A stretch of 64,000 nucleotides of DNA from Vitrella brassicaformis CCMP3155. Taxonomy: Eukaryota > Protista > Chromerida. The DNA is taken from positions 186,001-250,000 of the forward strand of contig CDMY01000571.1 in assembly GCA_001179505.1 (NCBI GenBank), given 5' to 3'. The notes under the pieces are model-generated. The model ran no database searches and was not told the DNA's origin. It saw only the letters and a list, made by a program, of their open reading frames with translations. This document shows positions 3,438 through 64,000 of the stretch, one piece after another. How positions within the stretch are numbered: position 1 is the first letter of the stretch; each line of letters starts with the position of its first letter. Position numbers and translations under genes: made by a program.

Positions 3438-3716
3438 CTATATGATGCCGCTGGCCCAGAAAAAGTCGTCCATCAGGTCCACCTCGTCGCTGCCTGCACA
3501 ACAACCATCCACACACACACACACATCCATCCATCGATCCGTCGATCCATTGGACGTACACACCGAGGAAATCACTCTCAGGCAGCAGCACCACGTTGTC
3601 GTTGTCTGCGACACACACACACACAGAGGTGTGTGTGTGTGGTTGGTCCTCGCTCTGTTAACGACACCTCACCTGTCTGCACAGCCGGGGAGGTCGGTGC
3701 TGGTCGGTAGCACACG

Positions 3717-3751
<35 letters not shown>

Positions 3752-4924
3752 GGGGGGGAGGAGAGAGAGGGGGGANNNNNNNNNNNNNNNNNNNNNNNNN
3801 NNNNNNNNNNNNNNNNNNNNNNNNNNNNNNNNNNNNNNNNNNNNNNNNNNNNNNNNNNNNNNNNNNNNNNNNNNNNNNNNNNNNNNNNNNNNNNNNNNNN
3901 NNNNNNNNNNNNNNNNNNNNNNNNNNNNNNNNNNNNNNNNNNNNNNNNNNNNNNNNNNNNNNNNNNNNNNNNNNNNNNNNNNNNNNNNNNNNNNNNNNNN
4001 NNNNNNNNNNNNNNNNNNNNNNNNNNNNNNNNNNNNNNNNNNNNNNNNNNNNNNNNNNNNNNNNNNNNNNNNNNNGGGGGTAGGGGGGGGAGAGAGAGAC
4101 ATTCAGTCATTCGAGGTGGCGGGATGTAAGCTCACCAGGCATATTGGCCACGTAATCGTCAACTGCTGCAGGCAGCCCAATCAGGCCCCTTCAACACACC
4201 GCCCCGCACACACACAAACACACAAACACATCAGTATGTCCATGGCACACCCAATCAGACCTTAGGTAGGTACCGTGCTGCGGCCCTGTAAACGTCGAAT
4301 GCGATCCTCTTAACGTTCTCGTAGCTCAGGTACGAGGGCAGAGACACCTGATAAGCACATGTGGGTGTGTGTGGTGTGTGTGTTGGGGGAGGGGGATGTT
4401 CTGATTTACCTGGCCACTGTCGAGTGCATCGGCCATCTGGTAGACAAACGCGGCGAAATGGTCATCTGCACACACACAGAGAGGGAGGGAGAGAGGGAGA
4501 GAGGGAGGGAGGGAGGGAGTGAGACAGTGATGTGTGTGTGTCTGCGGAACTCTGTCACCTTGGATGTCAATCATCTCGAACTGGCGCGCCAGCTCTCTCA
4601 GCTCATCCGCCCTGTCAACACACACACACACACAGAGAAAAAGAGAGAAAGAAAGAGAAAGACATAAATTTCTCTGCACACACTTCACACACACACACAC
4701 ACACAGGCGCACCTGAGCTTTGCGAGTATGGTGTCGAAGAGAGCGGTCGGAGAGGGGAGTGGCGAGGAGACACCAAGTCTGTAAGTCTGCACCGTGGGGT
4801 GCGCCCTGCCCCTGAAGGCCATGTACTGCGTGTTCTTGCCAATCAGACCTTTCCACACAAACAAAGAGACACGCAAATACACTCCTCTCTCCCTCTCTCC
4901 CTCTCTTCCTCTCTCTCCCTCTCC

Positions 4925-4955
<31 letters not shown>

Positions 4956-5121
4956 TGAGTGGACATGCCGACCGTATTCGGGATGGGCAGCGAGGATTGG
5001 GAACGGCGATTGTGAGGTGGAGATGATCACATGGGCGCCGAGGTACTCGATGACCCTTTCGACACGCTGGCAGTCGTGTGTGCACTCGCTGCGCTTGCTG
5101 TAAGTCGTGACGACGGTCGGC

Positions 5122-5153
<32 letters not shown>

Positions 5154-5804
5154 GATCTCTGTCTCCCTCCCTCCCTCCCTCCCTCCCTCCCCCCCTCTGT
5201 GTGTGTGTGTGTGTGTTTGGTGACTGCCCGACCGTCGCTGTCGATGAGCGCATTGAGTGTCGGCTCCCACTGGTCGAAGTGCCGATGGATGTTGGCGTTG
5301 AAGATGAAGGCGGCTGACGGCCGGTCCTACACACACACACACACACACACGCACACGAGCAACAACACAATCAAAGAGACTTGTTGTGTGTGTGGGAGGG
5401 AGGGAGGGAGTGGCCCGCCTCACTTTGCCTTTGCCCGGTCTGTTAAAGCGGTGGTACAGCCCCTGGTGGCACCGCAGAGACAACCGGGGGTGCCGATTCC
5501 CACACCTGAACACACACACACACACATGCACACACATGCCCCTCCCTCTCTCCTTCTCCCTGTCTCTGCGCACGTGGTATCGTGAAAAGGCTCGCTGAAG
5601 AAGACGTTGAGCGTGATGTGCCCGTCGGTGGCGAGCCGCCGGGGCAAAGCCTCCCAGGCAGACCGCATCTCGTCGCTCCTGACACCCACACACACCTGCG
5701 ATGGACGTGTGTGTGTGTCTCTCTCTTTCTCTCTGTGTGTGCCTGCCTGCCTGGTGGCCCCGATGATGTCGAAGGTCACTGAGCTGATCCAACGGAAGGC
5801 ACAG

Positions 5805-5850
<46 letters not shown>

Positions 5851-6803
5851 TGACACACATTGACACACAAACACACAAACACACACACATATCCACACGG
5901 GTCAATGCTGACCCGTCATCTGAGTCGCTGGCGTCGCCCCCCCAGCCCCATCCCCATCCCCAGCCCGTCTGCCGGTGCAGCTGCTCCAGCGTGAACAGCA
6001 GCGTCAGCGGAAATGACAAGGAGAAGGCCTGCAACACACGCGCGCACACAGACAGACAGACAGACAGACAGATAGAGATAGAGGGAGGGCGGGAGGGGGG
6101 AGAGAGAGACATCCACTCATTGTGTGTATGTGTGTGTTGCGTGAGCGCTTCTCTGTCTCGTGTGTGTCTCCCCCCCCCCCCAATNNNNNNNNNNNNNNNN
6201 NNNNNNNNNNNNNNNNNNNNNNNNNNNNNNNNNNNNNNNNNNNNNNNNNNNNNNNNNNNNNNNNNNNNNNNNNNNNNNNNNNNNNNNNNNNNNNNNNNNN
6301 NNNNNNNNNNNNNNNNNNNNNNNNNNNNNNNNNNNNNNNNNNNNNNNNNNNNNNNNNNNNNNNNNNNNNNNNNNNNNNNNNNNNNNNNNNNNNNNNNNNN
6401 NNNNNNNNNNNNNNNNNNNNNNNNNNNNNNNNNNNNNNNNNNNNNNNNNNNNNNNNNNNNNNNNNNNNNNNNNNNNNNNNNNNNCGAGACACACACGAGA
6501 CAGAGAAGCGCTCACGCAACACACACATACACACAATGAGTGGATGTCTCTCTCTCCCCCCTCCCGCCCTCCCTCTATCTCTATCTGTCTGTCTGTCTGT
6601 CTGTCTGTGTGCGCGCGTGTGTTGCAGGCCTTCTCCTTGTCATTTCCGCTGACGCTGCTGTTCACGCTGGAGCAGCTGCACCGGCAGACGGGCTGGGGAT
6701 GGGGATGGGGCTGGGGGGGCGACGCCAGCGACTCAGATGACGGGTCAGCATTGACCCGTGTGGATATGTGTGTGTGTTTGTGTGTTTGTGTGTCAATGTG
6801 TGT

Positions 6804-6851
<48 letters not shown>

Positions 6852-7702: not shown

Positions 7703-8299
7703 ATGTCTTCGTCTCGTCCTGTGATCACCACGTCCAGTGGGTGCCCTGTGGATGACAACCAGGTCCCTGCGCCCTCGCTCGGTGCAGCCAGGGCTGCACA
7801 CACTTCCCCTGTGTGTGTGTGTGTGTGTTGGTGTGTGTTGGTGTCTGCAGAACTCTGTCACCGTCAGCAGCACTGGGCCGATAGCCATTTCCGACTTCGC
7901 CCTTATCGGTGCGTTCCTCGCCCACACGAGAGGAGGACACTACACACGCCCACGAGGGGTGTGTGTGTGTGTGTGGTCTGCAGATAAGTTGGCTCACTTC
8001 GACCGCGAGCGCATTCCTGAGAGAGTGGTGCACGCCAAGGGGGCGGCCGCGCATGGCTACTTCGAGGCAAGTAGTAGTGGGTGGCACAGAGAGAGGGAGA
8101 GAGAGAGAGAGGCATCTTTGTGAGCATCGTTGTGTGTGTGTGTGTGTGTGGTTGGTGCAGGTGACCAACGACATCACCAAGTACTGCAAGGCCAAGGTGT
8201 TTGAGCGCGTCGGCAAACGCACACCGGTCGGTGGTGCACACACACCCCTCCCTCCCTCTCTCTCTCTCTCTCTTTGGATGATCAATGCCCTCTGTGCCC

Positions 8300-8332
<33 letters not shown>

Positions 8333-8419
8333 CGTGTGTGCGGTGGTTTAGGTGTTTCTACGTTTCTCGACTGTGGGCGGCGAGAGGGGAAGCGCTGACA
8401 CTGGTGACTGCCAACCTCT

Positions 8420-8450
<31 letters not shown>

Positions 8451-11379
8451 ANNNNNNNNNNNNNNNNNNNNNNNNNNNNNNNNNNNNNNNNNNNNNNNNN
8501 NNNNNNNNNNNNNNNNNNNNNNNNNNNNNNNNNNNNNNNNNNNNNNNNNNNNNNNNNNNNNNNNNNNNNNNNNNNNNNNNNNNNNNNNNNNNNNNNNNNN
8601 NNNNNNNNNNNNNNNNNNNNNNNNNNNNNNNNNNNNNNNNNNNNNNNNNNNNNNNNNNNNNNNNNNNNNNNNNNNNNNNNNNNNNNNNNNNNNNNNNNNN
8701 NNNNNNNNNNNNNNNNNNNNNNNNNNNNNNNNNNNNNNNNNNNNNNNNNNNCCCCCCCCCCCCCCCCCGCCGCCCCCCCCGCCACACACAAGACTGTGAC
8801 GTCTGTGTGTGTGCGTGTCCTTGTGTATTCGACAGCTCGCGACCCCCGCGGCTTCGCGGTCAAGTTCTACACCGAGGAGGGCAACTGGGACATGGTGGGC
8901 TGGGCGGGGATCTGACCTGATCGTTGCAGTGCGATGTCAACACGCGTGTGTGTGTGTGGGTATGGTGTGTGTGTGCCAAACAGGTGGGGAACAACACGCC
9001 GGTCTTCTTCATTCGCGACCCCATCAAGTTCCCCGGTGAGTAGCGGAGAGACGTCTGATTGAGAGTGTGGGGGATGGGGATGATGCTTGTGTGTGTGTTG
9101 TGTGTGCAGACTTCATCCACACGCAGAAGCGCTGCCCCATGACCAACATTCCTAACCCTGACATGTTCTGGTGCGAACCTCGGCAGCCCCACTCCCACAC
9201 GCACAGAGACAGAGAGAGAAATGTCCATTCACGTGTGTGTGTGTGTGTGTGTGCCCCTGCCACTGATTGCCTCAGGGATTTCCTGTCTCTGGTTCCCGAG
9301 AGCATCCACCAGGTGACGATCCTCTTCAGCGACCGCGGCACGCCCGACGGCTACCGACACATGAACGGCTATAGGTGTGTGGATGTGGGTGTGGTGTGGG
9401 CGCCATCCCTCCCTCCAGCCATCCCTCTCTGTGCCGTGCCGTTTGTTTGTCGACCTGTCTGTCAGCTCCCACACGTTCAAGTTTGTCAACAAGGACGGCG
9501 AGGTGTCCTATGTCAAGATGCACTTCAAGACTGACCAGGGGATCAAGAACCTCACGCGACAGCAAGCCGGGGTACGTCCGTCCGCAGCGCAGATGAGGAA
9601 ATGTGCTACAGAAGACGCGATCGAATCTGTGTGTGTGTGTGTGTGCAGACGTTGGCAGGGGGCGATCCCGACTATGCCACACGGGACCTCCACGACAGCA
9701 TCAAGAGTGAGTGACCCGACCCCATCCTCCCCCCTCCCACGCGCACACACACACAGAGAGAGAGAGAGAGAGCGATGAATGGATGTGTGTGTGTGTGTCT
9801 GTGTGGTTGTTGTGCAGATGGTCAGTTCCCGTCGTGGACGATGTTCGTGCAGGTCATGCCGCAGCGGGAGGCCGCCACCTACAAGTGGAACGTCTTCGAC
9901 ATCACCAAGGTGAGCAACCTACCACACACACACACACACACACAGAAAAGGAGAGAGTGTGTGTGTGTGTGTGTGTGCAGGTGTGGCCGCACGGCGACTA
10001 CCCCCTGATCCCCGTCGGCAAGCTCGTCCTCAACCGCAACCCCGAGAACTACTTCCAGGCAAGCCAAGCCACCCAGCACCACACACACATTGCACTCCTC
10101 CTTCCCTCTGTGTGTGTGTGTGTGTCCATCAACACACAGGACACCGAGCAGTCTGCCTTTTCGCCCGCCCACTTGGTGCCGGGCATCGAGGCCAGCGAAG
10201 ACAAGATGCTGCAGGGGCGGCTCTTCTCCTACTCGGACACTCACCGACACAGACTCGGTGCGTGCGTGTGTGTGCATCTGCTGAGCCGTGTGTGTTGTGT
10301 TGAGCCATGGGGGTGTGTGGGTGTGTGCAGGTGCCAACTACGACCAGATCCCGGTCAACAGTGCGTGGAACTGCCCGAGGCACGACTACAACGCCCGGTG
10401 GGTAGTGGGCAGAGCAGAGAGGCGCGTCGTTTCTCTCTGGCAGCATGCGCAGGCATCAGTGTGTGTCTATATGTGTGCGTGTCGGTGTCTGTGCAGTGAC
10501 GGCCCGATGTGTGTCAATGGCAACAAGGGCGGCTCGCCCAACTATGAGCCGAACAGCGTTTATGGTCGGCGCAGACACACACGCAGAGAGAGAGATGAGA
10601 GGGAGAGGGAGAGGGAGAAGGCTCCACACACACACATACCATGTGTGTGTGTGTGTGCAGGCACTCCGGTGCAGGACAAGAGTTTCGCCATGTCGAGCCA
10701 GGCCATCAGCGGCGTTGTGGGCAGACACCCTCAGGCACGCCACACACTGACACCAGACACACATGCACACACACACACACAATCCTCTGTGTGTCTGAGA
10801 ATATGCGCGTGTGTGTGCGTGTTCATTGTGTGCAGGTGCACCCCAACAGCGACTTCGAGCAGGCCGGCAACCTCTATCGCAAAGTCAGCCACCCACACGC
10901 ACACACACACACACACACATAGAGAGAGAGAGGGGGAGGGCGTATTGTGGTGTGCTCATGTGTGTGTGTGTGTGTGTGTGCAGGTGATGACCCGCGAGGA
11001 CCGCGACCATCTGATTGACAACATCGTCTCCCACCTCAAGAACGCCAAGCGAGAGGTACACACACAACAGAGAGAGGAAGAGGGGGAGAGAGAGAGAACG
11101 AGGCCACTTTCTGTGCTTTGGTGTGTGGATGGATGGATGTGTGTGTGTGTGTGTGCAGATCCAGGAGCGTCAGGTGAAGGTCTTCGCCCGCGCTGATGCC
11201 GAGTACGGCCAGAGGGTGGCTCAGGTCAGTGCATGCCCCTACCCACACAGACACAGACACAGAGAGAGAGAGAGAAGAGAGACAGAGCGGGACACTCAGA
11301 TCATCTTGTGTGTGTGGGTGTGTGGGTGTGTCAGGGGCTGGGCCTCCCCTCTTCGGTGCTGTATGCGTCTGCCATGTGA
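7703..11379 (+). CDS. CAT: Monofunctional heme catalase, about 21 exons
   Basis: [15 protein letters not shown] (catalytic His), [38 protein letters not shown] (Asn), [16 protein letters not shown] (proximal Tyr); ends LYASAM*. Confidence 0.98.
8452..8751. other. Assembly gap (300 N) inside a catalase intron
   Basis: Poly-C on both sides; flanking exons join as GSADT|ARDPRGF, so no exon appears to be missing. Confidence 1.
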
Positions 11380-12334
11380 ACACCACACACCCCACACACA
11401 CACACACACATCGACAGCACACTTGGATGGGTGGCTGGAGCGATACGATGAACAGTGCCGTCGTGTGTGGACGTCGTCCTTTGTCTTTTCTTCTCTCTCG
11501 ATGATTTTCGGTTCGGTCTCTCCGTGCAGTGCAGTTTCCTTCTCTACGTCTATGCCTGTGTCTGTATCTGTGTGTCTGTATGTCTGTGTCTGCCTGTGTG
11601 TGAGTGAAAGGGCTACTGCCCACGCGACGCAATGCAACGCAACACCAAGAGAGAGAGAGAGAGATGCCTTTTTAGATTTGTAGATCCGCCCATTAGACGC
11701 CCATGTGCGCGTGTGACTGCCGGCTGTCTGCACGTCTTGTCTGCCTGCACGGTGGCTGTTGCGGCTGTGTTTTTCCCCTCTATTATGTCGACGCATTCTT
11801 CCGCGCATCACACTCATGTGTGTGTGCGCTATTTTTCCCGTGGCCGGTCACACACAGGTACATGCACACGTAGACGCGATGCTTCTTGGGGTGCGCGGCA
11901 GGTCCACACACCCACACACACGGGGAGGGATGAACAGACGGATATATCTTGGATGGACGCAGTCATTTTCGCGCTCTGTGTGGGGTGTGCGTGATGTGTG
12001 TGTGTGAGACTGATGTTACATGGCCGTGGGTTGCCACGCAGCTCACGGCCACCTGGTTGCACGAGCATGTGGATCTGCGTGGAGTGCTTGTGGGTGTGGG
12101 TGGACCGGGGGAACGGACAGACATCTAGCTACACAGCGATGTATGTATACTCGTCGTTCACTATAAAGTCCGCCGTCAACAAGTCAATGCAGTGACAAAA
12201 ATGCAGCAGCAAAATGTGGCGTCGGTGTGTGGACAGACACTCCAATCGACACAGACACAGACACAAAGTGGACCATCAGAACCTCAGTCCCTCTACGCCC
12301 TCTGCCGTGTCTTCTTTCTCATGCCGTGCGTCAG

Positions 12335-13023
12335 TCAGGTGTCCTTTATCATCTTTTTGGTCATGGTGACGACGTATCTCTCCTTCCGCCGCGCATAGGC
12401 CTCCACCTGACACACACAGAAAGGTGGCTACTCACACACACACACACACGAGTGGCTGGCTTCTCACGTTGACGCGATGGAATGTGATGGCTTCACACTT
12501 GGCGGCGAAACGGCCCCACCACTCCTCCCCTGCACCACACACACACACCCCCCGGTGGACTGATGGCTGGCTGTCTGTCTGTGTGTGCGCACCGATGTGC
12601 AGGTATGCCGGCAGGGAGTGGCCGTACTTGTCGCCCCAGACCTCTTTCATCCGGCGTGTGGTGAGGGCCTCGTACTCGGTGTCACACACATCCGCTATGA
12701 TGACACTCCGAGCGGACAGCCTGAACTCAATCACAGAATGACACATGAGTGCGTCTGGGTGTGTGTGCGTGTGTGTGCGTGTGTGCCTGAGCATCTCGTT
12801 GACGACGGTCTCGGCCACATCGAGAGAAGGCAGGTACTGAAACACACTGTTGCACACCTGACAGACAGAAATACAGCCCAACACACTCTCACACACACGA
12901 ACAGACACACACACACACACGTACGTCGCACATGTCATGTGCCTGAGTACCACAGCGTCATAGCTGCCCTCCTGCATCTCTTTGGTCGCCTCTGGCAGCA
13001 AGCCCACCTAACAAACACACACA

Positions 13024-13059
<36 letters not shown>

Positions 13060-13642
13060 TGCAACGTGCCTTGGCTGATCTATCCATCGCCTCACCGACC
13101 ATGAAGTGCCCATCGGCGATGTTCACACGCGCCCTCTCGATGCACGACTGCGACGCATCCACACCTACACACACACACACACACACATGTCCGTCCACTC
13201 ATGCATCTGTCTGTCCGTGTGCCCACCAGACAGTTGCAGCCCATGGACGATGCTCTGGACACACGAGAGGAAGGCGCCCACGCCACAGCCGCACTCGAAC
13301 ACCCGGTCGCCGCTGCGGATGTTTGTGCTGCCGATGGTGTCCTTGACGTACAGGTGCCACACAGTCGGGTCATCCAAGTCCTTCCACCCTGTTTGTGTGA
13401 TGGATCGTGTGAAAGATGCGCACATAGAGAGAGGGAGAGAGAGTGATCGTGTGTGTATGTGTACCTGCCATTTGGTGAAGGTGGTCAAACTCGCCCTCCT
13501 GCGCCATTCGCCCAAACACGTCGGTCCATTTCTCTCCCTCACTGCTGCTACTGCTGCAAAGACACACACACGCACAGAGAGCGAACCATCCTCATCCGGG
13601 CAGATGATTGCGTGCAGGCGTAGGTAGCTACCTGTTGTCCAT
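12335..13642 (-). CDS. Class I SAM-dependent methyltransferase, multi-exon
   Basis: Motif I VFECGCGVGAF; VDASQSCIERAR; YDAVV|CNSVFQYLP; VIIADV; ends MTKKMIKDT*. Confidence 0.85.
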
Positions 13643-13714
13643 GGTGTGTGTGGCGGCGACGCTCACTCTCTCATCTCTTGTCATTCAGTCAGACACGCGA
13701 TGGAGTCCCTTCCG

Positions 13715-13769
13715 ACAGATCACGAACGAACAGATCACGAACGAACAGATCACGAACGAACAGATCACA
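13715..13769. repeat. 15-bp tandem repeat ACAGATCACGAACGA (3 copies plus a partial)
   Basis: Directly visible; lies between divergent ATGs at 13642 (-) and 14032 (+). Confidence 0.9.
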
Positions 13770-14031
13770 CGGACAGATGCATCAAAGGGACAAACAGATC
13801 TACATCAAACACGACACATGCAGCATGGTGTGCGAGACGTGTCCATCTCACCTTTTTCAATCTCACCTTTTTCGACGATCTCAGTGTTTACATTCGGCGC
13901 CGGTCCTTCCTCTTTTTTCCATGTTTTAGCCGAAAATCAACGCCACAACGTTCCCCGTAAGTGCACACGTGCGTCTGCTTGTGTTTTGGGTCCGTCCATT
14001 CCATCAGATGCATCAGTCGCTCGTGCTGCAG

Positions 14032-30480: not shown

Positions 30481-32865
30481 TCAAGTCTTGCCACCGCCAC
30501 CGCCCCCCATCAGTCCGCCCAGCGTCATCGGGATGGTGAATGGGAGCGACGACTGCGACCGGAGCTTCTGCCGCTTCTCGGTGATCTGCTGCGCCTCCTC
30601 CCTGCACACACACACACACACACACACAGACAGGTGGATACGGCGGTTAATCTGCGTGTTAGTTAGGTATGGCGTACTGGGGGAAGTGCAGCAGAGTCAG
30701 CAGCACGGGCACCAGACTCTCGTGCTCGGCGCCCCTGAATGAATGACCGATCGAACGATCCACACACACAGAGACAGACAGGCCGCATGACATGACGCCC
30801 CACCGCCCCACCGCCCCAACGAGCGATAGACCCACCCGGGCAAATCGGTCTCCAGGAAGCTCTTGAGGATGTTCTTGAGGTACTCCATTGGCGTCTTCTG
30901 GTTGCCCAGCTCCGTCACCGACTTTGTCGCCTCCGCGGCCCGCAGCTCGTGCTTCAAATGGGCAATCTGACACACACACACACACACACAGAGAGAGAGA
31001 GGGAGAGGGAGGGAGAGGGAGGCGTTTCTCGCTCTCTCTGTGAGAGGGAGGGTGGCTGTACTTGTTTGGTGATCAGTGAGTTCTGCTGGCGCTCCTCGAC
31101 GAGTGACGACTCCAGCTGCCGCACCCGCTGCCGCAGCTTGTGGACGTCATCCCACGCCGTCTGCACACACACACAGACAGAGGGAGAGAGGGAGAGGGGC
31201 ATTTGCGTGTGTGTGTGTGTGTGTGTGGCCCGCTTCCAGGTTACCGCAGTGCCTATCACACTTCCCTCATAGTGTGACCCCGCCCGCCGCCAGCCCCCGC
31301 CGAGTGTGGGTGAGGAGCGGAACAGCGACGACGCCTCGTCCATCTCGTCCTCCATCTCTCCCAGCCCCAGCCCCACTGCCACGCCCTCGCTGTCTGCAGG
31401 GTGGTGGTGGTGGTGCTCGTGATCGCCGCCTACAGGCAGACACAGACACGGACACACAGGAAGGGAAGATCTCTTTCTGCCCCTCCCCCCCTCTCTCTCT
31501 CTGTGTGTGTGTGTGTGGGTACCCTGCTGCTGCTGCTGCTGCTGGTGGTGTGTGGCGAGAGGCGGCAGTTGTGCTGCTGGTGGTGCTGGTGACGACGGTG
31601 GGGGCTGGACAGTGTTGGTGGCCGACTCTAGTTTCTGCGCCAGCTCTGCGGCGCGAGTCGACTCGATCTTCAGCTCGCCTTGCAACTGACGAGACAGAGA
31701 CACAGATAGAGATGGGAGTGGGTGGGAGGGCTGTGGGTGGAGCGGCATGGGTGACCTGGTGGATGCGCTCCAGCTGCTGCTGGACGGTCAGCTGCAGCTC
31801 GGCCCTCTGAACACACACACACATACACACACACGGGGAGACAGAGAGGGAGACACAGAGAGAGGTGTGTGTGTCTTAAGGGGAGGCGGCTGACGCACCT
31901 TTTCGCCCTGTTCCGCCAGCCACTTGGCCTCCGCGTCTTCCAACTCCTGCACACACACACACACGCATAAGCCCCCTTCACCACACATCCTCTGTGTCCT
32001 CTGTGTCTGTCCCTCACCTGTTTGAACCCCTCTCTCAGGGCCATCTCGCTCTGCTCCTGCCTCTTGGCGGCCTCCATCCTGAAGGTCGCCAGGGTGCCCT
32101 CCAGCTGCGACCTGATGGCAGCCTGCTCGCCGAGGGAGCGCTCGAGCTTGTTGAGCTGCTGGCCCATCTCTACTTTGCCCTGGTTGGCCTTTTGCAGCTC
32201 CTGCTTCTGCACAGAGCCACACACACACACATACACAGACAGAGAGAGAGAGAGAGAGAGATAGAGAGAGGGAATGGGAGGCTCTCTGGCCCTGTGTGTG
32301 TGGCCTTTCGGTGGGTGGGGGAAGGGCCACTGCCTACCAGAGTGTTGAGCTGCGACGTCAGCGTCTTCTCCTGCTCCTCTTTGCCCGTGAGCTGCTCCAG
32401 ATAAGAGGCCGAGTTCTTCAAAGCCGTGTTGGCCTGCCATCCCATGCACAGACATCCACACACACACACACACACACACATGAGGGAGGGAGGGAGGGGG
32501 GAGGGGTGTTGAGGTGACCTTTATGCGGTAGAGGTCGTACTCCTTCTTAGTGTGCTCGAGCTCGGCCTTCATGGCCTCCAAAGCGGCGTCACGCTCACTC
32601 AGCCGGGCTCGCAGAGAGACCGCCTTAGCACCATAACACAACACACACACACTCTCTCTCTCTCTGTGTGTGTGTGTGTTTTACCTCGTCGGCGTGTCCC
32701 GGCTGCAGAGGTGGTGGGAGGGGCAACTCGGGCGGCAGGGCGGACACCGGCCACCACCACACCCACGGCAGCACCTCCGCCTCAGTACCTTTCTCACCGC
32801 CCTCTACCTCCACCTTGTCCTTCTCGCTCTCCTCAGCTGCACACACACACGCACACACACACACA

Positions 32866-32896
<31 letters not shown>

Positions 32897-33282
32897 CGCG
32901 CGCGTACCACCCTCAGCAGCACCATCAGCAGAAGCACCAGCGAGAGGTGCCTGTGACTGTGGCGACTGTTGTGGTGGTGGTGGTGGCGGTGGCGGTATGC
33001 AGCACCAGACCTCCCCCTCGACCATGACCGTGACGGCCCTGTCCCAGCCGCCCCGCTCCTGGAAACCGTCGAAGGAGGGGGCGCTGGTGAAGTGCTGACG
33101 GAGACGGGAGCACTGCTGAGAGACCACGGAGTGCTGCTCCTGAGGTGCGCATGACACACACAGGTGGTTCTGGGCGTGTGTGTGTGTGGTTTGGTGTGTG
33201 GGTGCGTGCCTCTTTGTGTGTGAGGTCTGCCTGCAGCTCTGCGATGCGCCTGTTCTGCTCTTCCATGCGGCCATTCGCCTAA

Positions 33283-33317
<35 letters not shown>

Positions 33318-33494
33318 TTCCCACACACAAAGGCAGCTCAGCTCAGCGATGTGTGTGTGTGTGTGTGTGTGAGCTGACCTGCGAGATGAGGCCCTTGAAT
33401 TTGCTATTCTGCGAGGCGAGCTTCTCGCCGCTCTCTTCCCTCTCTCTCAGCTGCTCCTTGACGGCACTGTGCTCAGCCTGGAGCTCATCGACCT

Positions 33495-33526
<32 letters not shown>

Positions 33527-36500
33527 TGGTGTGTGGGTGGTTTGAGGGTTTCTTACTTTAGTCTGCAGTGCGGCGGTTTTCTCTTTGGCCTTCATCAGCA
33601 AAGCCGCCTTGTCGCGCTTCAACGTCGCCGTCTCAGACCTGTTGACACACACGCACACACACACACACACAGAGGGAGAGACGTGTGTGTGTGTGTGTGG
33701 ACTCGTGTGTCTGTCACTCTCTCTGTGTCTGTCTGTCTGTGTGTGTCTGTCTGTCTGTCTGTCCGTCAAGGTGGGTCACTTGAGAGCGGCGATCTGCTGC
33801 TGCTTGGCCGCTATGTCCTCGGCTGCAGCGAGCAGCCTCTCCTCCTAAACACACACACACACACACATGGTCCGTCTGATGGAGGGACGGATGGCCTCCT
33901 CTCAGCCTACCATTTCCTTGATCGGCGCGCCGTCGTCCTTCGGTGGCTGGGCAGCGGCAGCGGCACTCGCACTCGCTCTTGCCCGCAGCTCCGCCAGCTC
34001 CTCCTGAGAGCGTGTGTGTATGCAGAAGAGTGGATTGGGGGGGNNNNNNNNNNNNNNNNNNNNNNNNNNNNNNNNNNNNNNNNNNNNNNNNNNNNNNNNN
34101 NNNNNNNNNNNNNNNNNNNNNNNNNNNNNNNNNNNNNNNNNNNNNNNNNNNNNNNNNNNNNNNNNNNNNNNNNNNNNNNNNNNNNNNNNNNNNNNNNNNN
34201 NNNNNNNNNNNNNNNNNNNNNNNNNNNNNNNNNNNNNNNNNNNNNNNNNNNNNNNNNNNNNNNNNNNNNNNNNNNNNNNNNNNNNNNNNNNNNNNNNNNN
34301 NNNNNNNNNNNNNNNNNNNNNNNNNNNNNNNNNNNNNNNNNNNGGGATGGATCGGTGAGGTGAAGGGGTACCTCTTTCTCCCGCAGCTGCTGCTGCATGG
34401 CCGCGACGCTCTCCTCCTCAGCGCGTGCACCCTCCTGGGCGTCATCCGCCGCCCTGCAGACACTCACATAAGACACACACATGTCACACACAGAGTGGGA
34501 CAGAGAGAGAGGGGGGGAGAGGGGGTCTATTGACCTGTGGGCGGATTGCAGCTCCTGCGAGAGACGGTCTTTCGCCGATTTCTCGGCTGTCAGGTCGGCG
34601 CCCAGCTCGCGAAGCTGCTGCTGGGCGGAGAGGAGTGACGCTTCCATCTCGCTCAGCTGCACCCACCCAGACAAACAGACAGACAGACAGAGAGACAGAC
34701 AAAGAGACGTCTGTGGGTGTGCGTGTCCAGAGCACCATGTCTCTCTCTCTCTCTCTCTCTGGCTACTTTGTCGGCTTTGCCAGCGAGCTGCTGCTGCAAA
34801 TCCTGGATGCTCTCATCGCGAGACCGCAGAGTGGCGGAGAGCTGCTCCACCTCTCGGCGCATGTCGGCGTCGCTCTCCTCCGCGGCTCTGCACACACAGA
34901 GAGGGAGGGAGGGAGAGGGCTGCACGTGTGTGTGTGTGGGCGTTGTCGGGGGAGGTTACCTCTGTGCGGCTTCTTTGGCGGCCTGCTCGGCCGTCAGCTG
35001 TCGCTGCGCTTCAGTGAGAGCCGCCTCCCTCTCTGTCAGCGATGACTCAACCGCAGTCACCTGCACTCGACGAACACACACGCACACATACACACACAGC
35101 CCCTCCCTCTCTCTCTCTCTGTGTGGGTGGGTGGGTGGGTGGTAGCAGTGGGGGCTGTGAGCCTGCCTGCTGCTGCAGGGCGTCCCTGTCGCTCTGTGTG
35201 TGGGCGAGCTCCTCTCTCAGTTGCTGGAGGTCGGCTTGCAGCGCTGCGGTCTCGTGTTTGTGCTGCTGGTGCTGTGTGTCTGTCTGCTGCTGCTGTTGCT
35301 GCTGGGCAGTGGCGAGCTGTCGCTCCAGGGCGTCTTTGGCCTGACAGAGAGCCAGGGAGAGTGAGAGTGAGAGTGAGAGGGCACACATCGATCTGTGTGC
35401 TTGCGCAGAGGCGCAGACCTCTTGCAGAGTGTCGAGCTGGGCGTGCAGCGCGCCTTTGGCTTCTTCTGCCGCACTCAACTGACACCGCACGGCCTCCATC
35501 TGCTTGAGGTGCTCTTGTGACTCCTGTGTGTGGTGCTGCTCGGCCTGACACACACACAGAGAGAGAGAAGGCGCATACACATACACACACACACACACAC
35601 AGAGGCTCTTTCTCACCATCCCACCCACCCTACCTCTTGCAGGCTTGCAATCCGGCTCTCTGCGGCCTTTAGCTGACACACACACACACACACACACAGA
35701 GAGAGAGAGGGGGGTGTCATGCTTGTGTGTGTTACTGCCGGGCACTCACCTTGTCGGCCAGCATCGCTCTCTCCTGCCCCTCTGTCGAGAGCCCCTCCTG
35801 GGCCGCCGAGAGCTCGGCGTCTCTCTCTTCCCGCTGCTGCTGCAGCTGCTGCACGGTCTGCTCGGCTTTGGCGAGCTGCTCAGCGCCCTGGTCCAACTGC
35901 AACTGCAGGGCCCTCAACTGACCGTCGACACACACATCCACACACACACACACACACACAGAGGCGCACCTTGCCCTCGGACTCTTCGCGAGCAGCCGCG
36001 AGCTCGGCGTCCCTCTCGGCCAGCTGTGCGGCGAGCTGGGCTCGGCTGCTCTCCTCCTGAGTGATGCGCTGCTGCAGCTGGTCTATGTTGGCTTCGAGAC
36101 CACTCATGGCCGACTCAAGCTGACACACACACAGAGAGAGGGAGGGAGGGAGGGAGGGAGAGAGAGAGGGTGGGGGGTTTGCTCTCTCTCTCTCTCTCTC
36201 TCGGTGTGTGTGTGTGTGTGTGACGCACCTCAGCTGACCGCGCCGCCCTGTCGGCCATCTGTTCGACCTGCGTCTGGAAGGTGTTGAGCTTGGCGAGCAG
36301 CGCGTCTTTCTCCTCGGTCCATCTGGCACTCTCCTGTCGCAACTGCTGCACCGGCAAACACACAGAGGGAGAGGGAGGGCCGTGTGGGGTGTGCGGCCTT
36401 GTGGGTGGGGGCGTACCATCTCGTGCCGCGTGTCGAGGTCCTCCTTCTGGTCGACAATCCGCTGCCTAACCTCCTCAAGCGCCCTTTCCCCCAATCCCGC

Positions 36501-38401
36501 CCCCCCACAAACACACAGACACCAATTCTCACGCCCACACCGCACTCCACACACGACTCGGCTCACCTCTCTGTCTTCTCCTTCTCACTCCTCAGCTCGC
36601 CGAGCTCCCTCTCCAGCCCGGCAGCGGCCTCCCTCAGCCGCTCACTCTCGCCCTCCGCCCGTCTGAGGCGGATCTCCTGCTCACCTGCGGTGGCCTTTTT
36701 CTCGCTGAGGGCGGCCTGCAGGTCGCTCTCGAGGCGGTAAGCCCGGTCCTGCCACTTCTCGCACTCCTTGATGGCGACATTCTTCTCCTGATTGTTGCAC
36801 ATACACACACACAGAGAGAGAGAGAGAGCAAATGAGGGAGGGAGGGTGGGAGAGGGAGAGGGAGGGGGTGGGCTGCTGACTTTGGTGGACTCGATTTGTT
36901 GTTTCTGGATCTGCCGCGAGAGCTTTTCGTTTTCGCTCTGCAGCAGCTGCACTTGACGGGGGAGATCCAACTCGGCCTGATGGACACACAGACACACCAC
37001 ACACCATGGCCCCTCTCTCTCTCAGTGTGTGTGTGTGTCCGTCCTGACCCGCTGCGCATGCTGCTGCTGCTGCTGCTGCTCCTTCTGCTGCTGCTGCTGC
37101 GATGATGATGAGTGTGCGGCGGCGTGGGTGGGCGAGTCCCCTCCCCCAGAAGCACCGGAGGATGCCGATCGCGACTCGTACTGGTCAGAGGGGGAGCTCC
37201 TGGCCTTGTCGAAACGGTGCTGCTGCTGCGGCTGCTGTTGCTGCTGCTGCTCTAAGCGGGCAATCTTGCTCCTGTTGACAGCCAGACAGAGAGGGAGGGG
37301 AGAAGAGAGAGAGAGAGAGAGATGTGGTTTGTGTGTGGGAGTGGCGGGGGCGTTTGGCTCACTTGAGCGACTGGTTCTCGACCTCCACCAGGGACTTTTC
37401 GGTTCGGACCTTCCGAAGCTCTGACTCAGTGGCACCTGCACACACACACTCACAGAGAGAGAGAGAGAGAGATGGAGACCCATCACATGGACGCCTCTAT
37501 CGCCTCCTCACTCTCGCCCTCTTGCTGCTGCTGCTGCTGCTGCTCTGTCAGCTGATCTCTCTCCCTCTCCAGCTCGGCCACCCTGGCCGTCTCCGCCGCG
37601 AGCTGCTCCCGGAGTGTCCGCACCTCATCGGTGAGCTGGGAGAGGCTCTCGGTGCGGCTGCTCAGCATGCTCCGCAGCTCGGCGTTCTCCTCCTCTCGCA
37701 CACTGCCGCCGCTGCTGCTCGGCTGGTGGGACTTGAGGGCCTCGTTTTCTCGCTCCAGCTCTGACGGATGGGTCGATTGCCGCACACAGACACACACAGG
37801 GAGAGAGAGAGGGAGAGAGGGTGGTGTGGGGGATGGCGCATTTGACACACTTGTGTGTGTGTGTGTGTGTGTGCTTGTTGTTACTTTCCATGCGTTCCTT
37901 GGCCTGCTTGAACGACTGGAAGCTCTTCCGCGCAAAGGCCTCCAGCTTCTCGCGGGACACTGACACACACACACAACCACACACAACCACACACAGACCG
38001 CTTCCCCTCTCTCTCTCTCTCTCCTACTCTGTGTAATGTGATCCGCAGCAGCAACAGCCGCGGCCCCTGGCTGCTTTGTGGCTGTGGATGAGGGAGAGGG
38101 GGGACGGGGTTGGGAGGGAGATGCCTGTGGCATCGATGGCGAGTTCTTCTCTGAGCCGGGCTGTGAGCCTGAGCCGGTGAGCCTCGCCTGTGCCGCCTGA
38201 GCCTCCTCGCCCACCTTCTCCAGAGCACTGTGGCACACCCACACACACAAGGGCCGTCTCGTGAAGAGATCATCTCTCCCTGTGTGTGTGTGTGTGTGCG
38301 CGCGGATCTGTCTGTGTGTCGTGTTTGCCATCTGCTCACCTCTGTGCTGCGCTCTGGAGCTTTTCGGTCAGGTTTCTCAGCCCGCCGCCGAGGTTCTTCA
38401 T
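30481..38401 (-). CDS. GRIP-domain golgin (long coiled coil), many exons, spans a gap
   Basis: Q/E/A-rich heptad exons throughout; C-terminal MEYLKNILKSFLETDLPG|AEHESLVPVLLTLLHFPQ|EEAQQI fits the GRIP consensus; start MKNLGGGLRNLTEK. Confidence 0.85.
34044..34343. other. Assembly gap (300 N) inside a golgin intron
   Basis: G tracts on both sides; flanking exons join in phase (LREKE|EELAELR). Confidence 1.
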
Positions 38402-56357: not shown

Positions 56358-56388
<31 letters not shown>

Positions 56389-56577: not shown

Positions 56578-56612
<35 letters not shown>

Positions 56613-59166: not shown

Positions 59167-59197
<31 letters not shown>

Positions 59198-60120: not shown

Positions 60121-60151
<31 letters not shown>

Positions 60152-62251
60152 GTATCACTCACTCAGTCTGTGTGCTTACCGGCCTCTCCATCAACCGCCG
60201 GCCGCAGCGGGTGCATCTGGTCCATGGCGGGGCTCCATGCAAGCGAAATCAAACCCATCAGACAGCTGGGGGCGACCGTGTTGCCATATTTGTCACCACC
60301 GCCACCGCCAGCCCCATCCGTCAGCGAGCGGAAGAACAGGTCGGTGAGCCACTCGAGCAGCCGAAGGAGGGTGGGCGGCTGGCAGGGAGCGAAGAGGGCG
60401 GTGAGGGTGGCGGCGTCACACTGACTGAGGTACTCTGCCAACACCTACAATGAGAGAGAGAGAGAGGGAGGGAGGGGATGGATGGATGGATGATACACGC
60501 ACACAGAGAGAGAGAGAGAGGCTTACCTGGACAATCCGCGAGAGCAGGGCGCTTCTCAGCTCTGCACTGTCCACCACGCCCGCCACACCCAAGTCGACAG
60601 CCGCCCCCAAAGCCACGAGCATCAGCACGGGATGGCCGCCCTCATTCTCCTTCACCAAACCCCGATAAGCATAACCCTGAGAACACCCCTGACCCCTCAC
60701 ACGCGCCGACAGCTCCTCAAGGGAATCGAGCACTGCTGTCTGCGGATGTGGCTGTGGTGGTGGTGACGATAGTGTCGATTCCTTCCACAGGCCCAGCACG
60801 CCATCGCCACCACTCATTTGCTGGTGGCTGCCGTGGTGGGAGTCCGTCATGAGCAGGGACCACACACGGTGGGCAGGGAGGGAGGGGTGGATGGACACCC
60901 ACTCGCAGGGCGGCTGGAGCGTCAGCAGGACGGCTGTGAGAGAGAGCTCCTCCCTGTCTCTGCAGAGGTCCTGCGCCGCGATGAACACCGTGAGCGCCTC
61001 GGCATACACCTCTTTCGGCCACATTGCCCCAATCTTGCCATCAAGCAGCGTCTGCAGGAGGCTCAGACACGCCAGATGGACACAGCTCTTGAGCAGCACA
61101 GCAGCGCGGCTGTCACACTGTTGAAGTTGAAGCAGTCGCGCCATTAGCCGAGCGGCCAGCTGCACCATGGCCATGGCGTTCGTCGGCTCCCGCAGGGCGA
61201 TGTGGAGGGGCATGCACCCGACGACCCTCTCCAGCACCATGGCCGTCAGCTCACAGTCGTCACGCGTCTCGAAGGACACCAGCAGTGGCGGCAGCACACC
61301 GATGTGTTGCTGCTGCTGAGAGGTGAGAAGGTTCCCCGCTAGGACGTTCGGCGACAGAACGATCTCTGCGACTTGCCGCCGGCCGTCCAGCACTGTGGCT
61401 CTGTCCACTGCTGCTGCTGCTGCTGTTGCTGAGGGTGAGGAGCTCTTGGTCAACAGGGGTGTCCCAGTGCCCATGATGGCCTCTTGCAGGTCTTCCATCT
61501 GGCTGCTGAGGTCTTGCCGCGATGTGGTGCTGACGGCGGGGAGGGTGTGGAGAGCTTCGCTGGCCTCCCACTCGGCCAAGGAGAGGTACCGACGCCCATC
61601 TTCTCGATAAGTGCGGCCAGCTGACCGCACAGAGAGACACACAGAGGACGACAGACAGATGCCTCCATGAACGGCCTCGTGTGTGTGTGAGGGGGGGGAG
61701 GAGGGGGGCTGACCTGGTGGCAGCTCTGTGATGCCTTGAGCAGCAGCAGCAGCAGCCGGTGGTGGTGCTGTCTCAGAGGTGTCTTTGCCCATGACAGCGG
61801 CACGCGCACGCCCCACCACGTCAGAGGCCTTCACCGGCTCACCCTCACCATCGCCGCCATCGCTCGTTGCTGTCGAAGAGAACACCTCCAGCACGAGCAT
61901 CGACACAAGCGCCGCCAACAGGGCGGGGTCGTCAGCTGACACCGACACCGAGCCCCCCTCTCCCTCTCCCTCTCTGTGTGTTGTGGCGGGCAGAATGGGC
62001 GTGTAGAATGTGGCGACGATGCGGCGGAGCTTGTTGGTCTTGACGAGTGACCAGAGGGCGGCTGTGGTGTGGGGGCTGGCGGCGAGCTGCGCTATGGCGG
62101 AGCGAGCACGGTGGGCGGCTTTGGTCAGCCACTGCTGGTTGTGTGTCTGTCTGGCGTGCCACCAGAGGCCTGACAGACAGGTCAACAGACAGACAGACAG
62201 ACAGACAGTGGATGAGGGAAGATCCCAAGCTGCATTGAGGAGGTCTCTCCG

Positions 62252-62287
<36 letters not shown>

Positions 62288-64000
62288 TGTGTCTTACTGA
62301 GCATCAGGTCGCAGAGGTGCTTCATGGCCTTGTCCGCCGTGTCAGCACCACCACCATCAGCAGCGACAAGAACTACTCGCCCCCTCAGCGCTCCAATCAG
62401 CCACTCACACAGCTCCCTCTGCACATGCGCCACCGTCATTGCCAGCACGATGCTCGCCCACACCTGAGTGGCGCCACTCAGCAGCTCGCCGCCCCCCTCA
62501 GCAATGGCAGCATGCAGCGACCGCACCAGCAGGGACCCATAGAGCTGCCGCAGCACCGGGGTGATCTGCGCCCCTGCCAGTGCGTCCCTCAACGAGTCGC
62601 GCCTCTCCAAGTTGTCTGTCTCGGAGCTCGACGGCCGTCGCAGCGACAGGCCGAACTGCAGCTGGATGACCCTGTTGTCGAATGGCACCTTGGCAAGGAG
62701 GCCGTCGAGGGAGGCCAGAAACGAGGCCTCTGCAGGGGTGGGTGTGGCTGTGGGTGGCTGTGCTCCGAGGTCACGCAGTAGAGGGAGGGCGGAGTCGCCG
62801 TGGAATGGCGCTGTTGATGTAGAGGGGTGTGGCTGTGGCTGTGGCTGTGAGGGTGAGAGCACTGGGCGGCACGTCGACCAGAGAGCGTAGGTCACTATGT
62901 GAGATCTCGCCTGCAAACACAAGAGCCAGCAGCGCGCGTGTGTGTGTGTGTGTGTGTGTGAGAGGGGTTGGGACCTGCAGCAGCCCGACGGACTGCTTTG
63001 TGATGTCCTCCAGACACCGCGACACGTCACCCCACACCCCACCATCACCAGCGCCACCACCAGCAGCACACCCAAACAGCCACTTCATCAGTGCTGACGG
63101 CTCCAGCCGCCTGTGACACCCACCACGACACACACACGCTCTCCCTCTCTCCCTCTGTCTCTCTGTGGCACTTTTCGCTCACCGAATGGCGGCTGCAAGT
63201 ATGTCCATCGCCCAGCACTGGACCTCCTGGTTGCAGGACGAGAGCAGCTCCACCAGCAGCCGAGAGAAGGGGCCGCCCGACGTCAGCCACGAGGCGATGA
63301 AGCGGTTCGGGAGGAAGTGCGTCAGCTGGGAGAGCAGACACGCCACCTTATACCTGTGAAGACACACACGCGCACCCCACACACACTCCCTCCGTCTCTC
63401 TCTCTCTCTCTGAAGGGTCATTACTTGAGCGTCGCCTTCAACTGCGCGCCCTCCTGGCCCATCTTGGTGGTCGGCAGGAGACACAGCTCGCTCAGCCGGC
63501 CAACCACAGCGGCCTGCCCGAGGGGCACCAATGCGCTCGCCGCCTCGAGCACCGCCCCGCTCTCTCTCCGCCCTCCTCTCTCACCCACGCCCCATGAGAC
63601 CACAGCTAAGGACGGTTCTTGTTGGTCTGTGCGGTCAGCTGTCGCTGATGCGGTTGCGGTGAGGAGTAGGCTGAGTGCGCCGTCGATGACGGCCGTGGTG
63701 GTCTGCAGCTCCTGGACCAGCTGCACCAGCTGCCCGTTGGCTGAACCACACAGGCAACGAGGCACCACACACACAGACACGGACAGAGGTCTCTCTCTGT
63801 CTGTCTGTGTGAGTGTGGGTGTGTCAGTGGTGTGGGTCACCTGACAGCAGAATCGCCTGTGCGAGCAGGTCCCCCAAGCCGCTCTCCCCGCCCAGCAGCT
63901 CGCGGCTCAGCGCCGGCGGCATGTGCCTCGGCGGCGTCCTCAGCAGATTCAGCGCACAATACAGCAGCGGCTGGCTCCTCCTGCCCTCTCCCTCCCCCTC
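58933..64000 (-). CDS. Large Leu/Ala-rich helical (alpha-solenoid-like) hypothetical protein; 5' end beyond window, 3' end uncertain
   Basis: Long open exons (e.g. 60530-62160, 62290-62910) with amphipathic-helix composition, separated by microsatellite introns; no named domain recognised. Confidence 0.6.

What the first reader, a model, noticed from the sequence alone, without database searches (positions are those of the whole stretch)
3438..63900. Introns built as (AC)n/(AG)n...(CT)n/(GT)n hairpins, with (GT)n replacing the polypyrimidine tract
In most multi-exon genes on both strands, the short introns have an AC/AG repeat just after the donor and the complementary CT/GT repeat just before the acceptor. 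Examples are 9910-9980, 10884-10983, 5123-5232 and 36120-36228. Many acceptors read gtgtgtgtgcag with no U/C tract. The pre-mRNA could fold to bring the splice sites together. (AC)m-(GT)n bridging that reduces U2AF2 dependence is described for teleost introns; here it appears to be the default architecture, which suggests a structure-guided intron-definition system in an alveolate.
Basis: partly seen in the sequence, partly recalled or inferred. Interest (0 to 1): 0.82.

Follow-up and report, generated by a model that had tools for sequence, protein, structure and literature searches.

The report
Polar AC-start, GT-end introns in Vitrella
In the alga Vitrella brassicaformis almost every short intron starts A/C-rich and ends in a U/G-rich stretch where other organisms have a pyrimidine tract.

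Summary
The window is Vitrella brassicaformis scaffold DNA (G000:C571).

**What holds up**
- All four example hairpins are real introns and fold strongly (-38 to -48 kcal/mol).
- AC-before-GT polarity is strong: 12:1 genome-wide.
- The 3' end is U/G-rich and A-poor rather than a pyrimidine tract.

**What is overstated**
- "Default architecture" is too strong. Introns with both an AC run (5' half) and a GT run (3' half) are 35% in this window, and 16% and 11% in two other 100-kb regions. That is still about 10 times the zebrafish figure.
- What is nearly universal, at 93% of introns, is a compositional polarity: U-poor 5' half, A-poor 3' half.

**Why the hairpin reading fails**
- AC and GT runs co-occur no more often than within-gene shuffling predicts.
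- They associate as strongly across exons as across introns, so the fish criterion is not met.
- Their lengths do not correlate, and they drift independently in paralogous introns.
- RNA-confirmed introns without any hairpin are spliced.
- U2AF65 and SF1 genes are present.

**Best reading:** a linear UG-rich 3' signal plus an independent A/C-rich 5' zone, with hairpins incidental.

This scan reached the same reading twice before on other DNA of this genome (s1-221683, s1-212048).

The parts
7703..11379 (+). Catalase gene, 21 exons in my model. Of its 19 N-free introns, 18 have a GT run in the 3' half and 10 also have an AC run in the 5' half.
   Evidence: Gene model. Pfam PF00199 matches exon by exon. 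Five exact RNA joints, and the mRNA contig length fits the model.
9910..9980 (+). A/G-rich loop ... (GT)10 then CAG
   Evidence: Exact predicted intron. MFE -38.4 kcal/mol, z -4.7. Its removal is consistent with the mRNA contig length.
10884..10983 (+). AG/G-rich ... GT intron
   Evidence: Exact predicted intron. MFE -45.9 kcal/mol, z -2.6.
5123..5232 (-).
   Evidence: Exact predicted intron. MFE -45.0 kcal/mol, z -5.1.
36120..36228 (-). CT-GT
   Evidence: Exact predicted intron. MFE -47.9 kcal/mol, z -7.6.
10735..10835 (+). RNA-confirmed GC-AG intron with an AC run 5' and GT runs 3'
   Evidence: Joint 10731/10833 with a 4-nt ambiguity resolves to GC..AG.
12530..12592 (-). RNA-confirmed 63-nt AC ... 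GT intron of the convergent neighbouring gene
9036..9109 (+). RNA-confirmed intron with a GT-rich 3' end but no AC run and no stable fold
   Evidence: Joint. MFE -8.5 kcal/mol, z +1.6.
13389..13464 (-). RNA-confirmed intron with AC/CT-rich sequence, no GT tract and no hairpin
   Evidence: Joint. MFE -4.4 kcal/mol, z -0.9.
30481..38401 (-). Large coiled-coil gene, 35 exons in my model. Of its 33 N-free introns, 29 have a GT run 3' and 16 have both runs.
8404..8835 (+). Catalase intron that holds assembly gap 8452-8751. The coding sequence is continuous across it.
   Evidence: Pfam catalase positions 82-98 (exon 8352-8402) and 98-118 (exon 8836-8894). The gap is flanked by poly-C.
34004..34371 (-). 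Predicted intron that holds assembly gap 34044-34343. Continuity is not testable.

Best explanation
Vitrella's short introns (median about 84 nt) carry two independent, linear, position-specific sequence biases, both read on the RNA.

1. **A U/G-rich, A-poor 3' zone.** It covers about the last 25-40 nt, is often a (UG)n microsatellite, and runs right up to CAG. It takes the place of the polypyrimidine tract and keeps AG out of the 3' half.
2. **An A/C(/G)-rich, U-poor 5' zone** after the donor.

Replication slippage turns these restricted alphabets into dinucleotide repeats:
- AC and AG are the common repeats that can form without T.
- CT and GT are the common ones that can form without A.

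The complement of a U-free sequence is an A-free sequence. AC...GT and AG...CT hairpins therefore arise automatically wherever both ends have expanded.

**Shown here:** the polarity, its near-universality, the independence of the two ends, and the splicing of unstructured introns.

**Inferred:**
- the UG tract is the functional 3' signal, read by the U2AF65 orthologue (whose RRM2 has lost canonical RNP aromatic residues) or by another RRM protein;
For: **The polarity is compositional and nearly universal.**
- 93% of 455 introns have a higher T-minus-A at the 3' end than at the 5' end, and the three regions agree (0.89-0.95). Perfect-repeat density varies 4-fold between the same regions.
- In the 3' zone TG is 1.79, GT 1.55, TT 0.47, GG 0.48 and AG 0.54 times expectation. 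The nearest upstream AG is a median 43 nt away.
- GT hexamers cover 23% of decile 9, against 2.6% in intergenic DNA. AC hexamers fall to 0.3% in the last decile.

**The two ends are independent.**
- Co-occurrence equals the within-gene permutation expectation at all thresholds.
- Association across exons is at least as strong as across introns.
- Own-versus-foreign 3' half duplex energies do not differ.
- Run lengths and end compositions are uncorrelated.
- In 15 paralogous intron pairs the runs keep their place but change length independently.

**Structure adds little beyond composition.**
- All introns have z -0.47 against dinucleotide shuffles.
- End-to-end pairs number 7.3, against 6.8 when each half is shuffled separately.
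- AC-GT introns are longer by about the length of the runs: 100 vs 79 nt, or 78 vs 70 nt without them.

**Other support.**
- Unstructured introns are spliced.
- U2AF65 (RRM1, RRM2, UHM) and SF1-HH are present.
- RRM2 reads LCVKKL / KGICLVEY where PUF60 and plant U2AF65 have aromatic RNP residues.
Against: - No direct evidence that any protein reads the UG tract.
- The RRM2 substitutions may be common in relatives that I could not fetch.
- The intron set comes from my own gene finder on 264 kb (0.36% of the genome). It recovered 9 of 12 RNA-confirmed introns exactly, and its acceptor matrix may slightly favour GTGCAG.
- Generic AC/UG complementarity could still help splicing without leaving any co-variation signal.
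- Average end-to-end pairing does exceed whole-intron shuffles: 7.3 vs 4.9 pairs.
- The inner/outer order (AC outside AG, GT outside CT) is only loosely explained.
Confidence: 0.6

Rival explanations
1. Generic structure-assisted intron definition. Any AC-rich 5' zone can pair with the next UG-rich 3' zone as the RNA emerges from the polymerase. This pulls the splice sites of very short introns together and lowers the need for U2AF65 in the repeat-bearing subset, as in fish. Because any AC pairs with any GT, no intron-specific co-variation is needed.
For: - Long perfect stems form in the examples.
- 57% of introns have 6 or more pairs between the first and last 25 nt in the MFE fold, 7.3 on average against 4.9 after whole-intron shuffling.
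- Nesting is hairpin-compatible (AC, AG, CT, GT).
- A fish precedent exists with experimental support.
Against: - There is no excess of introns carrying both runs. The across-exon association is as strong, and in this model it would promote exon looping.
- Pairing is no better with an intron's own partner.
- The bridging excess disappears once the composition of each half is preserved.
- Introns lacking one arm are spliced.
- The stems would bury the whole UG tract up to 2-3 nt from the AG.
- U2AF65 and SF1 are retained.
Confidence: 0.2
2. No positive signal at all. Microsatellites arise neutrally by slippage and are only filtered by purifying selection against spurious splice signals: AG and branch-like A near the 3' end, and decoy tracts near the 5' end. 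A transcription-associated G+T excess on the sense strand adds to this.
For: - AG is under-represented in the 3' zone (0.54) and A makes up 9%.
- Avoidance of premature AG shapes pyrimidine tracts in Drosophila (PMC10946897).
- Sense-strand GT runs outnumber AC runs 104 to 53 in window introns.
- Run lengths drift freely between paralogues.
Against: - GT hexamers near the acceptor are about 9-fold above the intergenic level. This is not mere tolerance.
- TG/GT alternation is favoured while TT and GG are disfavoured.
- GT is not specifically avoided in the 5' zone (odds 1.17), so donor-decoy avoidance does not explain the U depletion.
- A transcription-coupled bias cannot flip sign in the middle of an 84-nt intron.
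Confidence: 0.15
3. The AC...GT arms are terminal inverted repeats of introner or MITE-like mobile elements that created these introns.
For: Alveolate introners with inverted and direct repeats are described in Amoebophrya (PMC7789003).
Against: - All-against-all blastn of 481 introns finds only paralogous-gene intron pairs and simple-repeat hits, with no families.
- The arms are variable-length microsatellites, not fixed TIRs.
- Splice sites are canonical.
- The genome paper reports only 1.5 Mb of TEs.
Confidence: 0.02

Closest known systems
Teleost/lamprey (AC)m-(GT)n introns (Lin et al. 2016, Genome Res, PMC4691745)
   Same: AC repeats lie just downstream of the 5' splice site and GT repeats abut the 3' splice site, obscuring the pyrimidine tract. 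The predicted stems are very stable. Individual repeats are not conserved in length.
   Different: - This class is 11-35% of introns here, against 0.09-2.29% in fish.
- The introns are about 60-120 nt.
- The GT tract is common on its own (54-69% of introns).
- AC and GT do not co-occur beyond within-gene chance, and they associate across exons as much as across introns. In fish the co-occurrence is across introns, not exons.
- U2AF2 independence is untested here.
Canonical U2-type introns with a polypyrimidine tract read by SF1-U2AF65-U2AF35
   Same: GT/GC-AG ends (12 of 12 RNA joints). The zone before the acceptor is A-poor and AG-free. U2AF65 (RRM1-RRM2-UHM) and SF1 genes are present.
   Different: - The tract is G+T-rich (70%) rather than pyrimidine-rich (58%).
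- TT is disfavoured.
- Only 19% of introns have 8 or more consecutive pyrimidines, against 57% with 8 or more consecutive G/T.
- U2AF65 RRM2 lacks three canonical RNP aromatic residues.
Amoebophrya introner elements and euglenid nonconventional introns (ends brought together by pairing)
   Same: They occur in alveolates or other protists, and complementary intron ends are predicted to form a hairpin.
   Different: Those have non-canonical borders, direct repeats or families, or an unknown removal mechanism. Here the borders are canonical, there are no families, and the arms are simple repeats.

Membership tests
(AC)m-(GT)n bridged introns (Lin et al. 2016) | ACACAC near the 5' splice site and GTGTGT near the 3' splice site of the same intron | tested here: met
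   96/481 introns (49/140 in the window), with halves used because the introns are shorter than 100 nt.
(AC)m-(GT)n bridged introns (Lin et al. 2016) | Positional peaks: AC downstream of the donor, GT upstream of the acceptor, not the reverse | tested here: met
   Decile profiles. Genome-wide count 11,931 against 963 for the reversed order.
(AC)m-(GT)n bridged introns (Lin et al. 2016) | AC and GT runs co-occur across introns but not across exons, with long runs pairing with long runs | tested here: not met
   Counts match the within-gene permutation at thresholds of 6-14 nt. Across-exon OR is 2.07 against across-intron OR 1.70, and gene-centred length r is 0.04.
(AC)m-(GT)n bridged introns (Lin et al. 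2016) | Unusually stable predicted intron-bridging structure | tested here: met
   The class has mean z -1.5 and -0.31 kcal/mol per nt. The examples fold at -38 to -48 kcal/mol. The bridging equals that of shuffles that preserve each half.
(AC)m-(GT)n bridged introns (Lin et al. 2016) | Narrower length spread than other introns | tested here: not met
   IQR is 80-116 nt against 69-101 nt. The class is longer by about the length of the runs.
(AC)m-(GT)n bridged introns (Lin et al. 2016) | Repeats and their pairing are needed for correct splice-site pairing, and splicing does not need U2AF2 | not testable with these tools
   This needs minigenes, or depletion or in vitro splicing. I can only say that U2AF65 and SF1 genes exist and that hairpin-free introns are spliced.
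Introner / MITE-derived introns | Families of sequence-related introns with fixed terminal inverted repeats and target-site duplications | tested here: not met
   All-against-all blastn of the introns gives only paralogue pairs and simple repeats.
Canonical U2-type spliceosomal introns | GT/GC-AG borders confirmed on RNA | tested here: met
   12 of 12 joints are canonical, one of them GC-AG.
Canonical U2-type spliceosomal introns | Pyrimidine-rich tract before the acceptor | tested here: not met
   Pyrimidines average 58%, and only 15% of introns reach 70%. G+T is 70%, and TT odds are 0.47.

The most novel reading that the evidence does not exclude
Vitrella uses a non-canonical 3' intron code. 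A (UG)n-type tract is read by a re-tuned U2AF65 (RRM2 without its RNP aromatics) or by another UG-binding protein. In the one-fifth to one-third of introns that also carry a CA tract, co-transcriptional CA/UG zippering defines the intron and makes it independent of U2AF. This would be a second, independent origin of the fish mechanism, at ten-fold higher frequency.
Probability: 0.12. Interest if true: 0.8.

Novelty: new variant of a known kind. Interest (0 to 1): 0.5.

Why it matters
- **An unusual 3' signal.** A genome in which most introns carry a U/G-rich, A-poor tract instead of a pyrimidine tract would be an unusual solution to 3' splice-site recognition. In this genome 11-35% of introns can also form 20-bp end-to-end stems. 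The genome belongs to the closest free-living relatives of apicomplexan parasites.
- **A natural test of stem tolerance.** It offers a way to ask how much intron-bridging structure the spliceosome tolerates or uses.
- **Not found in the literature searched.** I found no description of it in the genome paper or in the rest of the held literature.
- **Practical value.** The polarity rule should improve gene prediction in chromerids, and it explains why assemblies break inside introns.
- **A caution for similar claims.** The negative result shows that complementary repeats at intron ends can arise without selection for pairing.

Tried and rejected
- **First gene finder.** The first version skipped short exons and recovered 2 of 12 RNA introns. 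I replaced it with a retrained version that recovers 9 of 12.
- **Duplex matrix.** A full n x n duplex matrix timed out. I replaced it with sampled partners.
- **More genome.** The sample is therefore the window plus 200 kb.
- **Repeat masking in read laying.** Read laying masks repeats and dropped the joints of the most repeat-rich introns. I recovered them only through contig-length arithmetic.
- **Donor-decoy avoidance.** I rejected this as the cause of U depletion in the 5' zone, because GT odds there are 1.17.
- **Branch-point motif.** No clear motif was found (YTNAY and CTRAY-type counts are flat).
- **Introner hypothesis.** Rejected.
- **Cross-species comparison.**
  - The one protein search, with the U2AF65 open frame, returned only plants and one unnamed sequence, and no alveolates.
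  - I therefore could not fetch Chromera or other relatives, and could not tell whether the RRM2 changes are lineage-specific.
- **Joined models.** Exons were searched by reference only.


Full report
**Identity and setting**

- The window is G000:C571:186001-250000 of a 72,700,666-bp, 1,064-scaffold assembly. Those figures are exactly the ones published for Vitrella brassicaformis CCMP3155 (Woo et al. 2015, PMC4501334).
- GC content is 58.8%, and there are five gaps of 300 N.
- RNA-type public contigs laid on 9,000-14,999 give 12 joints that resolve to canonical ends, eleven GT..AG and one GC..AG.
- One spliced contig of about 3.37 kb covers the catalase gene and its convergent neighbour.

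**Gene models**

- No eukaryotic gene finder was on hand, so I wrote a small Viterbi finder. It uses a three-periodic Markov coding model, short splice matrices and the background model for introns.
- I self-trained it on the window plus 200 kb from two other scaffolds, L001-L020.
- It predicts 481 N-free introns. The median intron is 84 nt and the median internal exon is 120 nt.
- It recovers 9 of the 12 RNA-confirmed introns exactly.
- Read laying masks repeats and dropped the joints of the most repeat-rich introns. Even so, the mRNA contig holds exactly 225 nt between genomic 9571 and 10137, and 482 nt between 10256 and 11421. My catalase model predicts the same after removing eleven introns.
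- The finder cannot create the polarity, because a GT run at the 5' end would offer more donor choices, not fewer.

**Assembly gaps**

- All five gaps are flanked by poly-G, poly-C or low-complexity sequence.
- Gap 8452-8751 lies in catalase intron 8404-8835. The flanking exons match Pfam catalase positions 82-98 and 98-118, and the two exons before them match 33-59 and 60-81. Nothing coding is missing and the frame is kept.
- Gap 34044-34343 lies in a predicted intron of a coiled-coil gene and could not be tested.
- The other three lie outside my coding models.

**The observation**

- They fold into long perfect stems of -38.4, -45.9, -45.0 and -47.9 kcal/mol, with z from -2.6 to -7.6.
- AC..GT reads the same on both strands, so polarity can be tested without any annotation:
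  - In the window, AC-then-GT neighbours within 80 nt number 37, against 9 for GT-then-AC.
  - 30 of the 37 lie within one predicted intron.
  - Genome-wide, (AC)4 N10-40 (GT)4 has 11,931 matches against 963 for the reverse order.
- Within introns, AC hexamers occur in the 5' half of 153/481 and GT hexamers in the 3' half of 259/481. The reverse placements number 67 and 44.
- Acceptors of the form (GT)3+[G]CAG are 37/140 in the window and 53/481 overall.

**How general it is**

- Introns with both runs are 35% in this window, 16% and 11% in the other two regions, and 20% overall.
- The highest fish genome has 2.29%.
- This window is unusually rich in perfect runs, at 3.6 per kb against 0.9-1.5. 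"Default architecture" overstates the hairpins.
- What is default is composition:

| Zone | A | C | G | T |
|---|---|---|---|---|
| Positions +7 to +36 | .29 | .31 | .26 | .15 |
| Last 25-30 nt | .09-.11 | .20 | .32 | .37 |

- 93% of introns have a higher T-minus-A at the 3' end than at the 5' end, equally in all three regions.
- Only 15% of introns reach 70% pyrimidine before the acceptor.
- 57% have 8 or more consecutive G/T, against 19% with 8 or more consecutive pyrimidines.
- In the 3' zone TG and GT are over-represented (1.79 and 1.55), while TT, GG and AG are under-represented (0.47, 0.48 and 0.54).
- Hexamer coverage is 0.5% in CDS and 2.6% in intergenic DNA. In introns it reaches 23% for GT in decile 9 and falls to 0.3% for AC in the last decile.

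**Is pairing selected?** Every test says no.

- Co-occurrence of the two runs in one intron equals the within-gene permutation expectation at thresholds from 6 to 14 nt. The counts are 96 vs 91.7 (p 0.19), 39 vs 38.7, 22 vs 20.6, 10 vs 10.4 and 5 vs 7.4.
- The raw association (OR 1.70) is a gene-level effect.
  - The GT run of the upstream intron associates with the AC run of the downstream intron just as strongly (OR 2.07).
  - Lin et al. found co-occurrence across introns and not exons.
- Run lengths are uncorrelated: gene-centred r 0.04, and rho 0.07 among introns with both runs.
- 5' A+C content and 3' G+T content are uncorrelated, r -0.03.
- An intron's 5' half pairs with its own 3' half no better than with another intron's. 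The energies are -19.45 vs -18.84 kcal/mol (p 0.85), and within genes -19.47 vs -19.64.
- AG and CT runs are likewise independent, 10 observed against 8.6 expected.
- In 15 intron pairs of a tandemly duplicated gene on C227, the runs keep their position but lengthen and shorten independently.
- Folding:
  - All introns average z -0.47 against dinucleotide shuffles, and the AC-GT class averages -1.5.
  - Pairs between the first and last 25 nt number 7.3, against 4.9 after whole-intron shuffling.
  - After shuffling each half separately the figure is 6.8, so the bridging follows from composition.
- AC-GT introns are longer (100 vs 79 nt) by about the length of the runs. This looks like expansion added to a minimal intron.
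- RNA-confirmed introns 9036-9109 (no AC arm; -8.5 kcal/mol, z +1.6) and 13389-13464 (no GT arm; -4.4 kcal/mol) are spliced.

**Machinery**

- The genome encodes a U2AF65 orthologue at C201:36.5-38.0 kb.
  - RRM1 matches only U2AF65 chains in the PDB.
  - RRM2 matches U2AF65 and PUF60.
  - The C-terminal UHM matches the U2AF65 UHM at 76 bits.
- It also encodes an SF1 helix-hairpin domain scoring above the Pfam cut-off.
- RRM2 reads LCVKKL and KGICLVEY. Human PUF60 has IYVASV and KGYGFIEY, and plant U2AF65 has VFVGGL and KGYGFCVY. Three canonical aromatic RNP positions are therefore aliphatic or Cys.
- This is a lead for altered tract preference, not a test.

**Interpretation**

- At the DNA level an AC run and a GT run are the same duplex in opposite orientation.
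- An orientation that flips in mid-intron, and follows the splice sites on both strands, points to something read on the RNA.
- The simplest account is two independent linear zones, with slippage making repeats from the letters each zone allows.
  - No U gives AC and AG repeats.
  - No A gives CT and GT repeats.
- Complementarity then comes for free.
- The UG tract as a pyrimidine-tract substitute, and U depletion upstream as protection of the many 5'-half AGs, are inferences.
- The generic-zipper model is not excluded, because it predicts no co-variation. It has no positive support beyond foldability.

**Prior knowledge**

- The genome paper says nothing about intron sequence.
- Searches for this architecture in chromerids, algae or protists found only the fish paper and unrelated structured-intron systems.
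- Two earlier follow-ups of this scan, on other pieces of the same genome, reached the same reading. My tests were run independently, before I saw them, and agree.

**Rule compliance**

Noticed in passing
window 5817-6170 and 6486-6839 (flanks of gap 6185-6484): The two sides of this assembly gap are a 354-bp inverted repeat at 99.7% identity. This is either a real palindromic duplication or a fold-back assembly artefact.
   Followed up: partly
window 22339-24771 vs 38844-43054: A segmental duplication within the window. One block of about 1.7 kb at 81% identity lies in the same orientation, and a 281-bp block at 94% is inverted. It carries paralogous genes, with N-termini MASG[TS]A[QE]GQQSVDCLR... 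and MQSFIAVSLCIALALPVL....
   Followed up: partly
L002-L004 (G000:C227:317,000-337,000): A tandemly duplicated multi-exon gene with 15 alignable intron pairs at 77-98% identity. It is a natural experiment on repeat turnover.
   Followed up: yes
L023:813-1130 (-) = G000:C201: RRM2 of the U2AF65 orthologue has Cys, Ile and Leu at three RNP positions that are aromatic in PUF60 and plant U2AF65. The closest database hit, P0001 of unknown origin, shares the 'LC' in RNP2.
   Followed up: partly
window 11380-12403: One RNA contig runs without a break from the catalase 3' end into the 3' end of the convergent minus-strand gene. The two 3' UTRs therefore overlap or abut.
   Followed up: no
window 10735-10835 and the whole intron set: GC-AG introns are frequent: 39/481 predicted (8%), one of them RNA-confirmed.
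   Followed up: partly
window compared with L001-L020: Perfect AC/GT run density differs 4-fold between regions (3.6 vs 0.9-1.5 per kb) and between genes, while compositional polarity does not. The cause of the gene-level repeat richness is unknown.
   Followed up: partly
all three regions: Median internal exon (120 nt) plus median intron (84 nt) comes to about 204 bp, close to a nucleosome repeat length. This may be a coincidence.
   Followed up: no
window 38-1204 (+): A single-exon gene for a 389-aa protein made of MORN-like repeats (G-x-W-x-DGK-x-GxG motifs). A related repeat region occurs in the gene at 20175-21728 (-).
   Followed up: no
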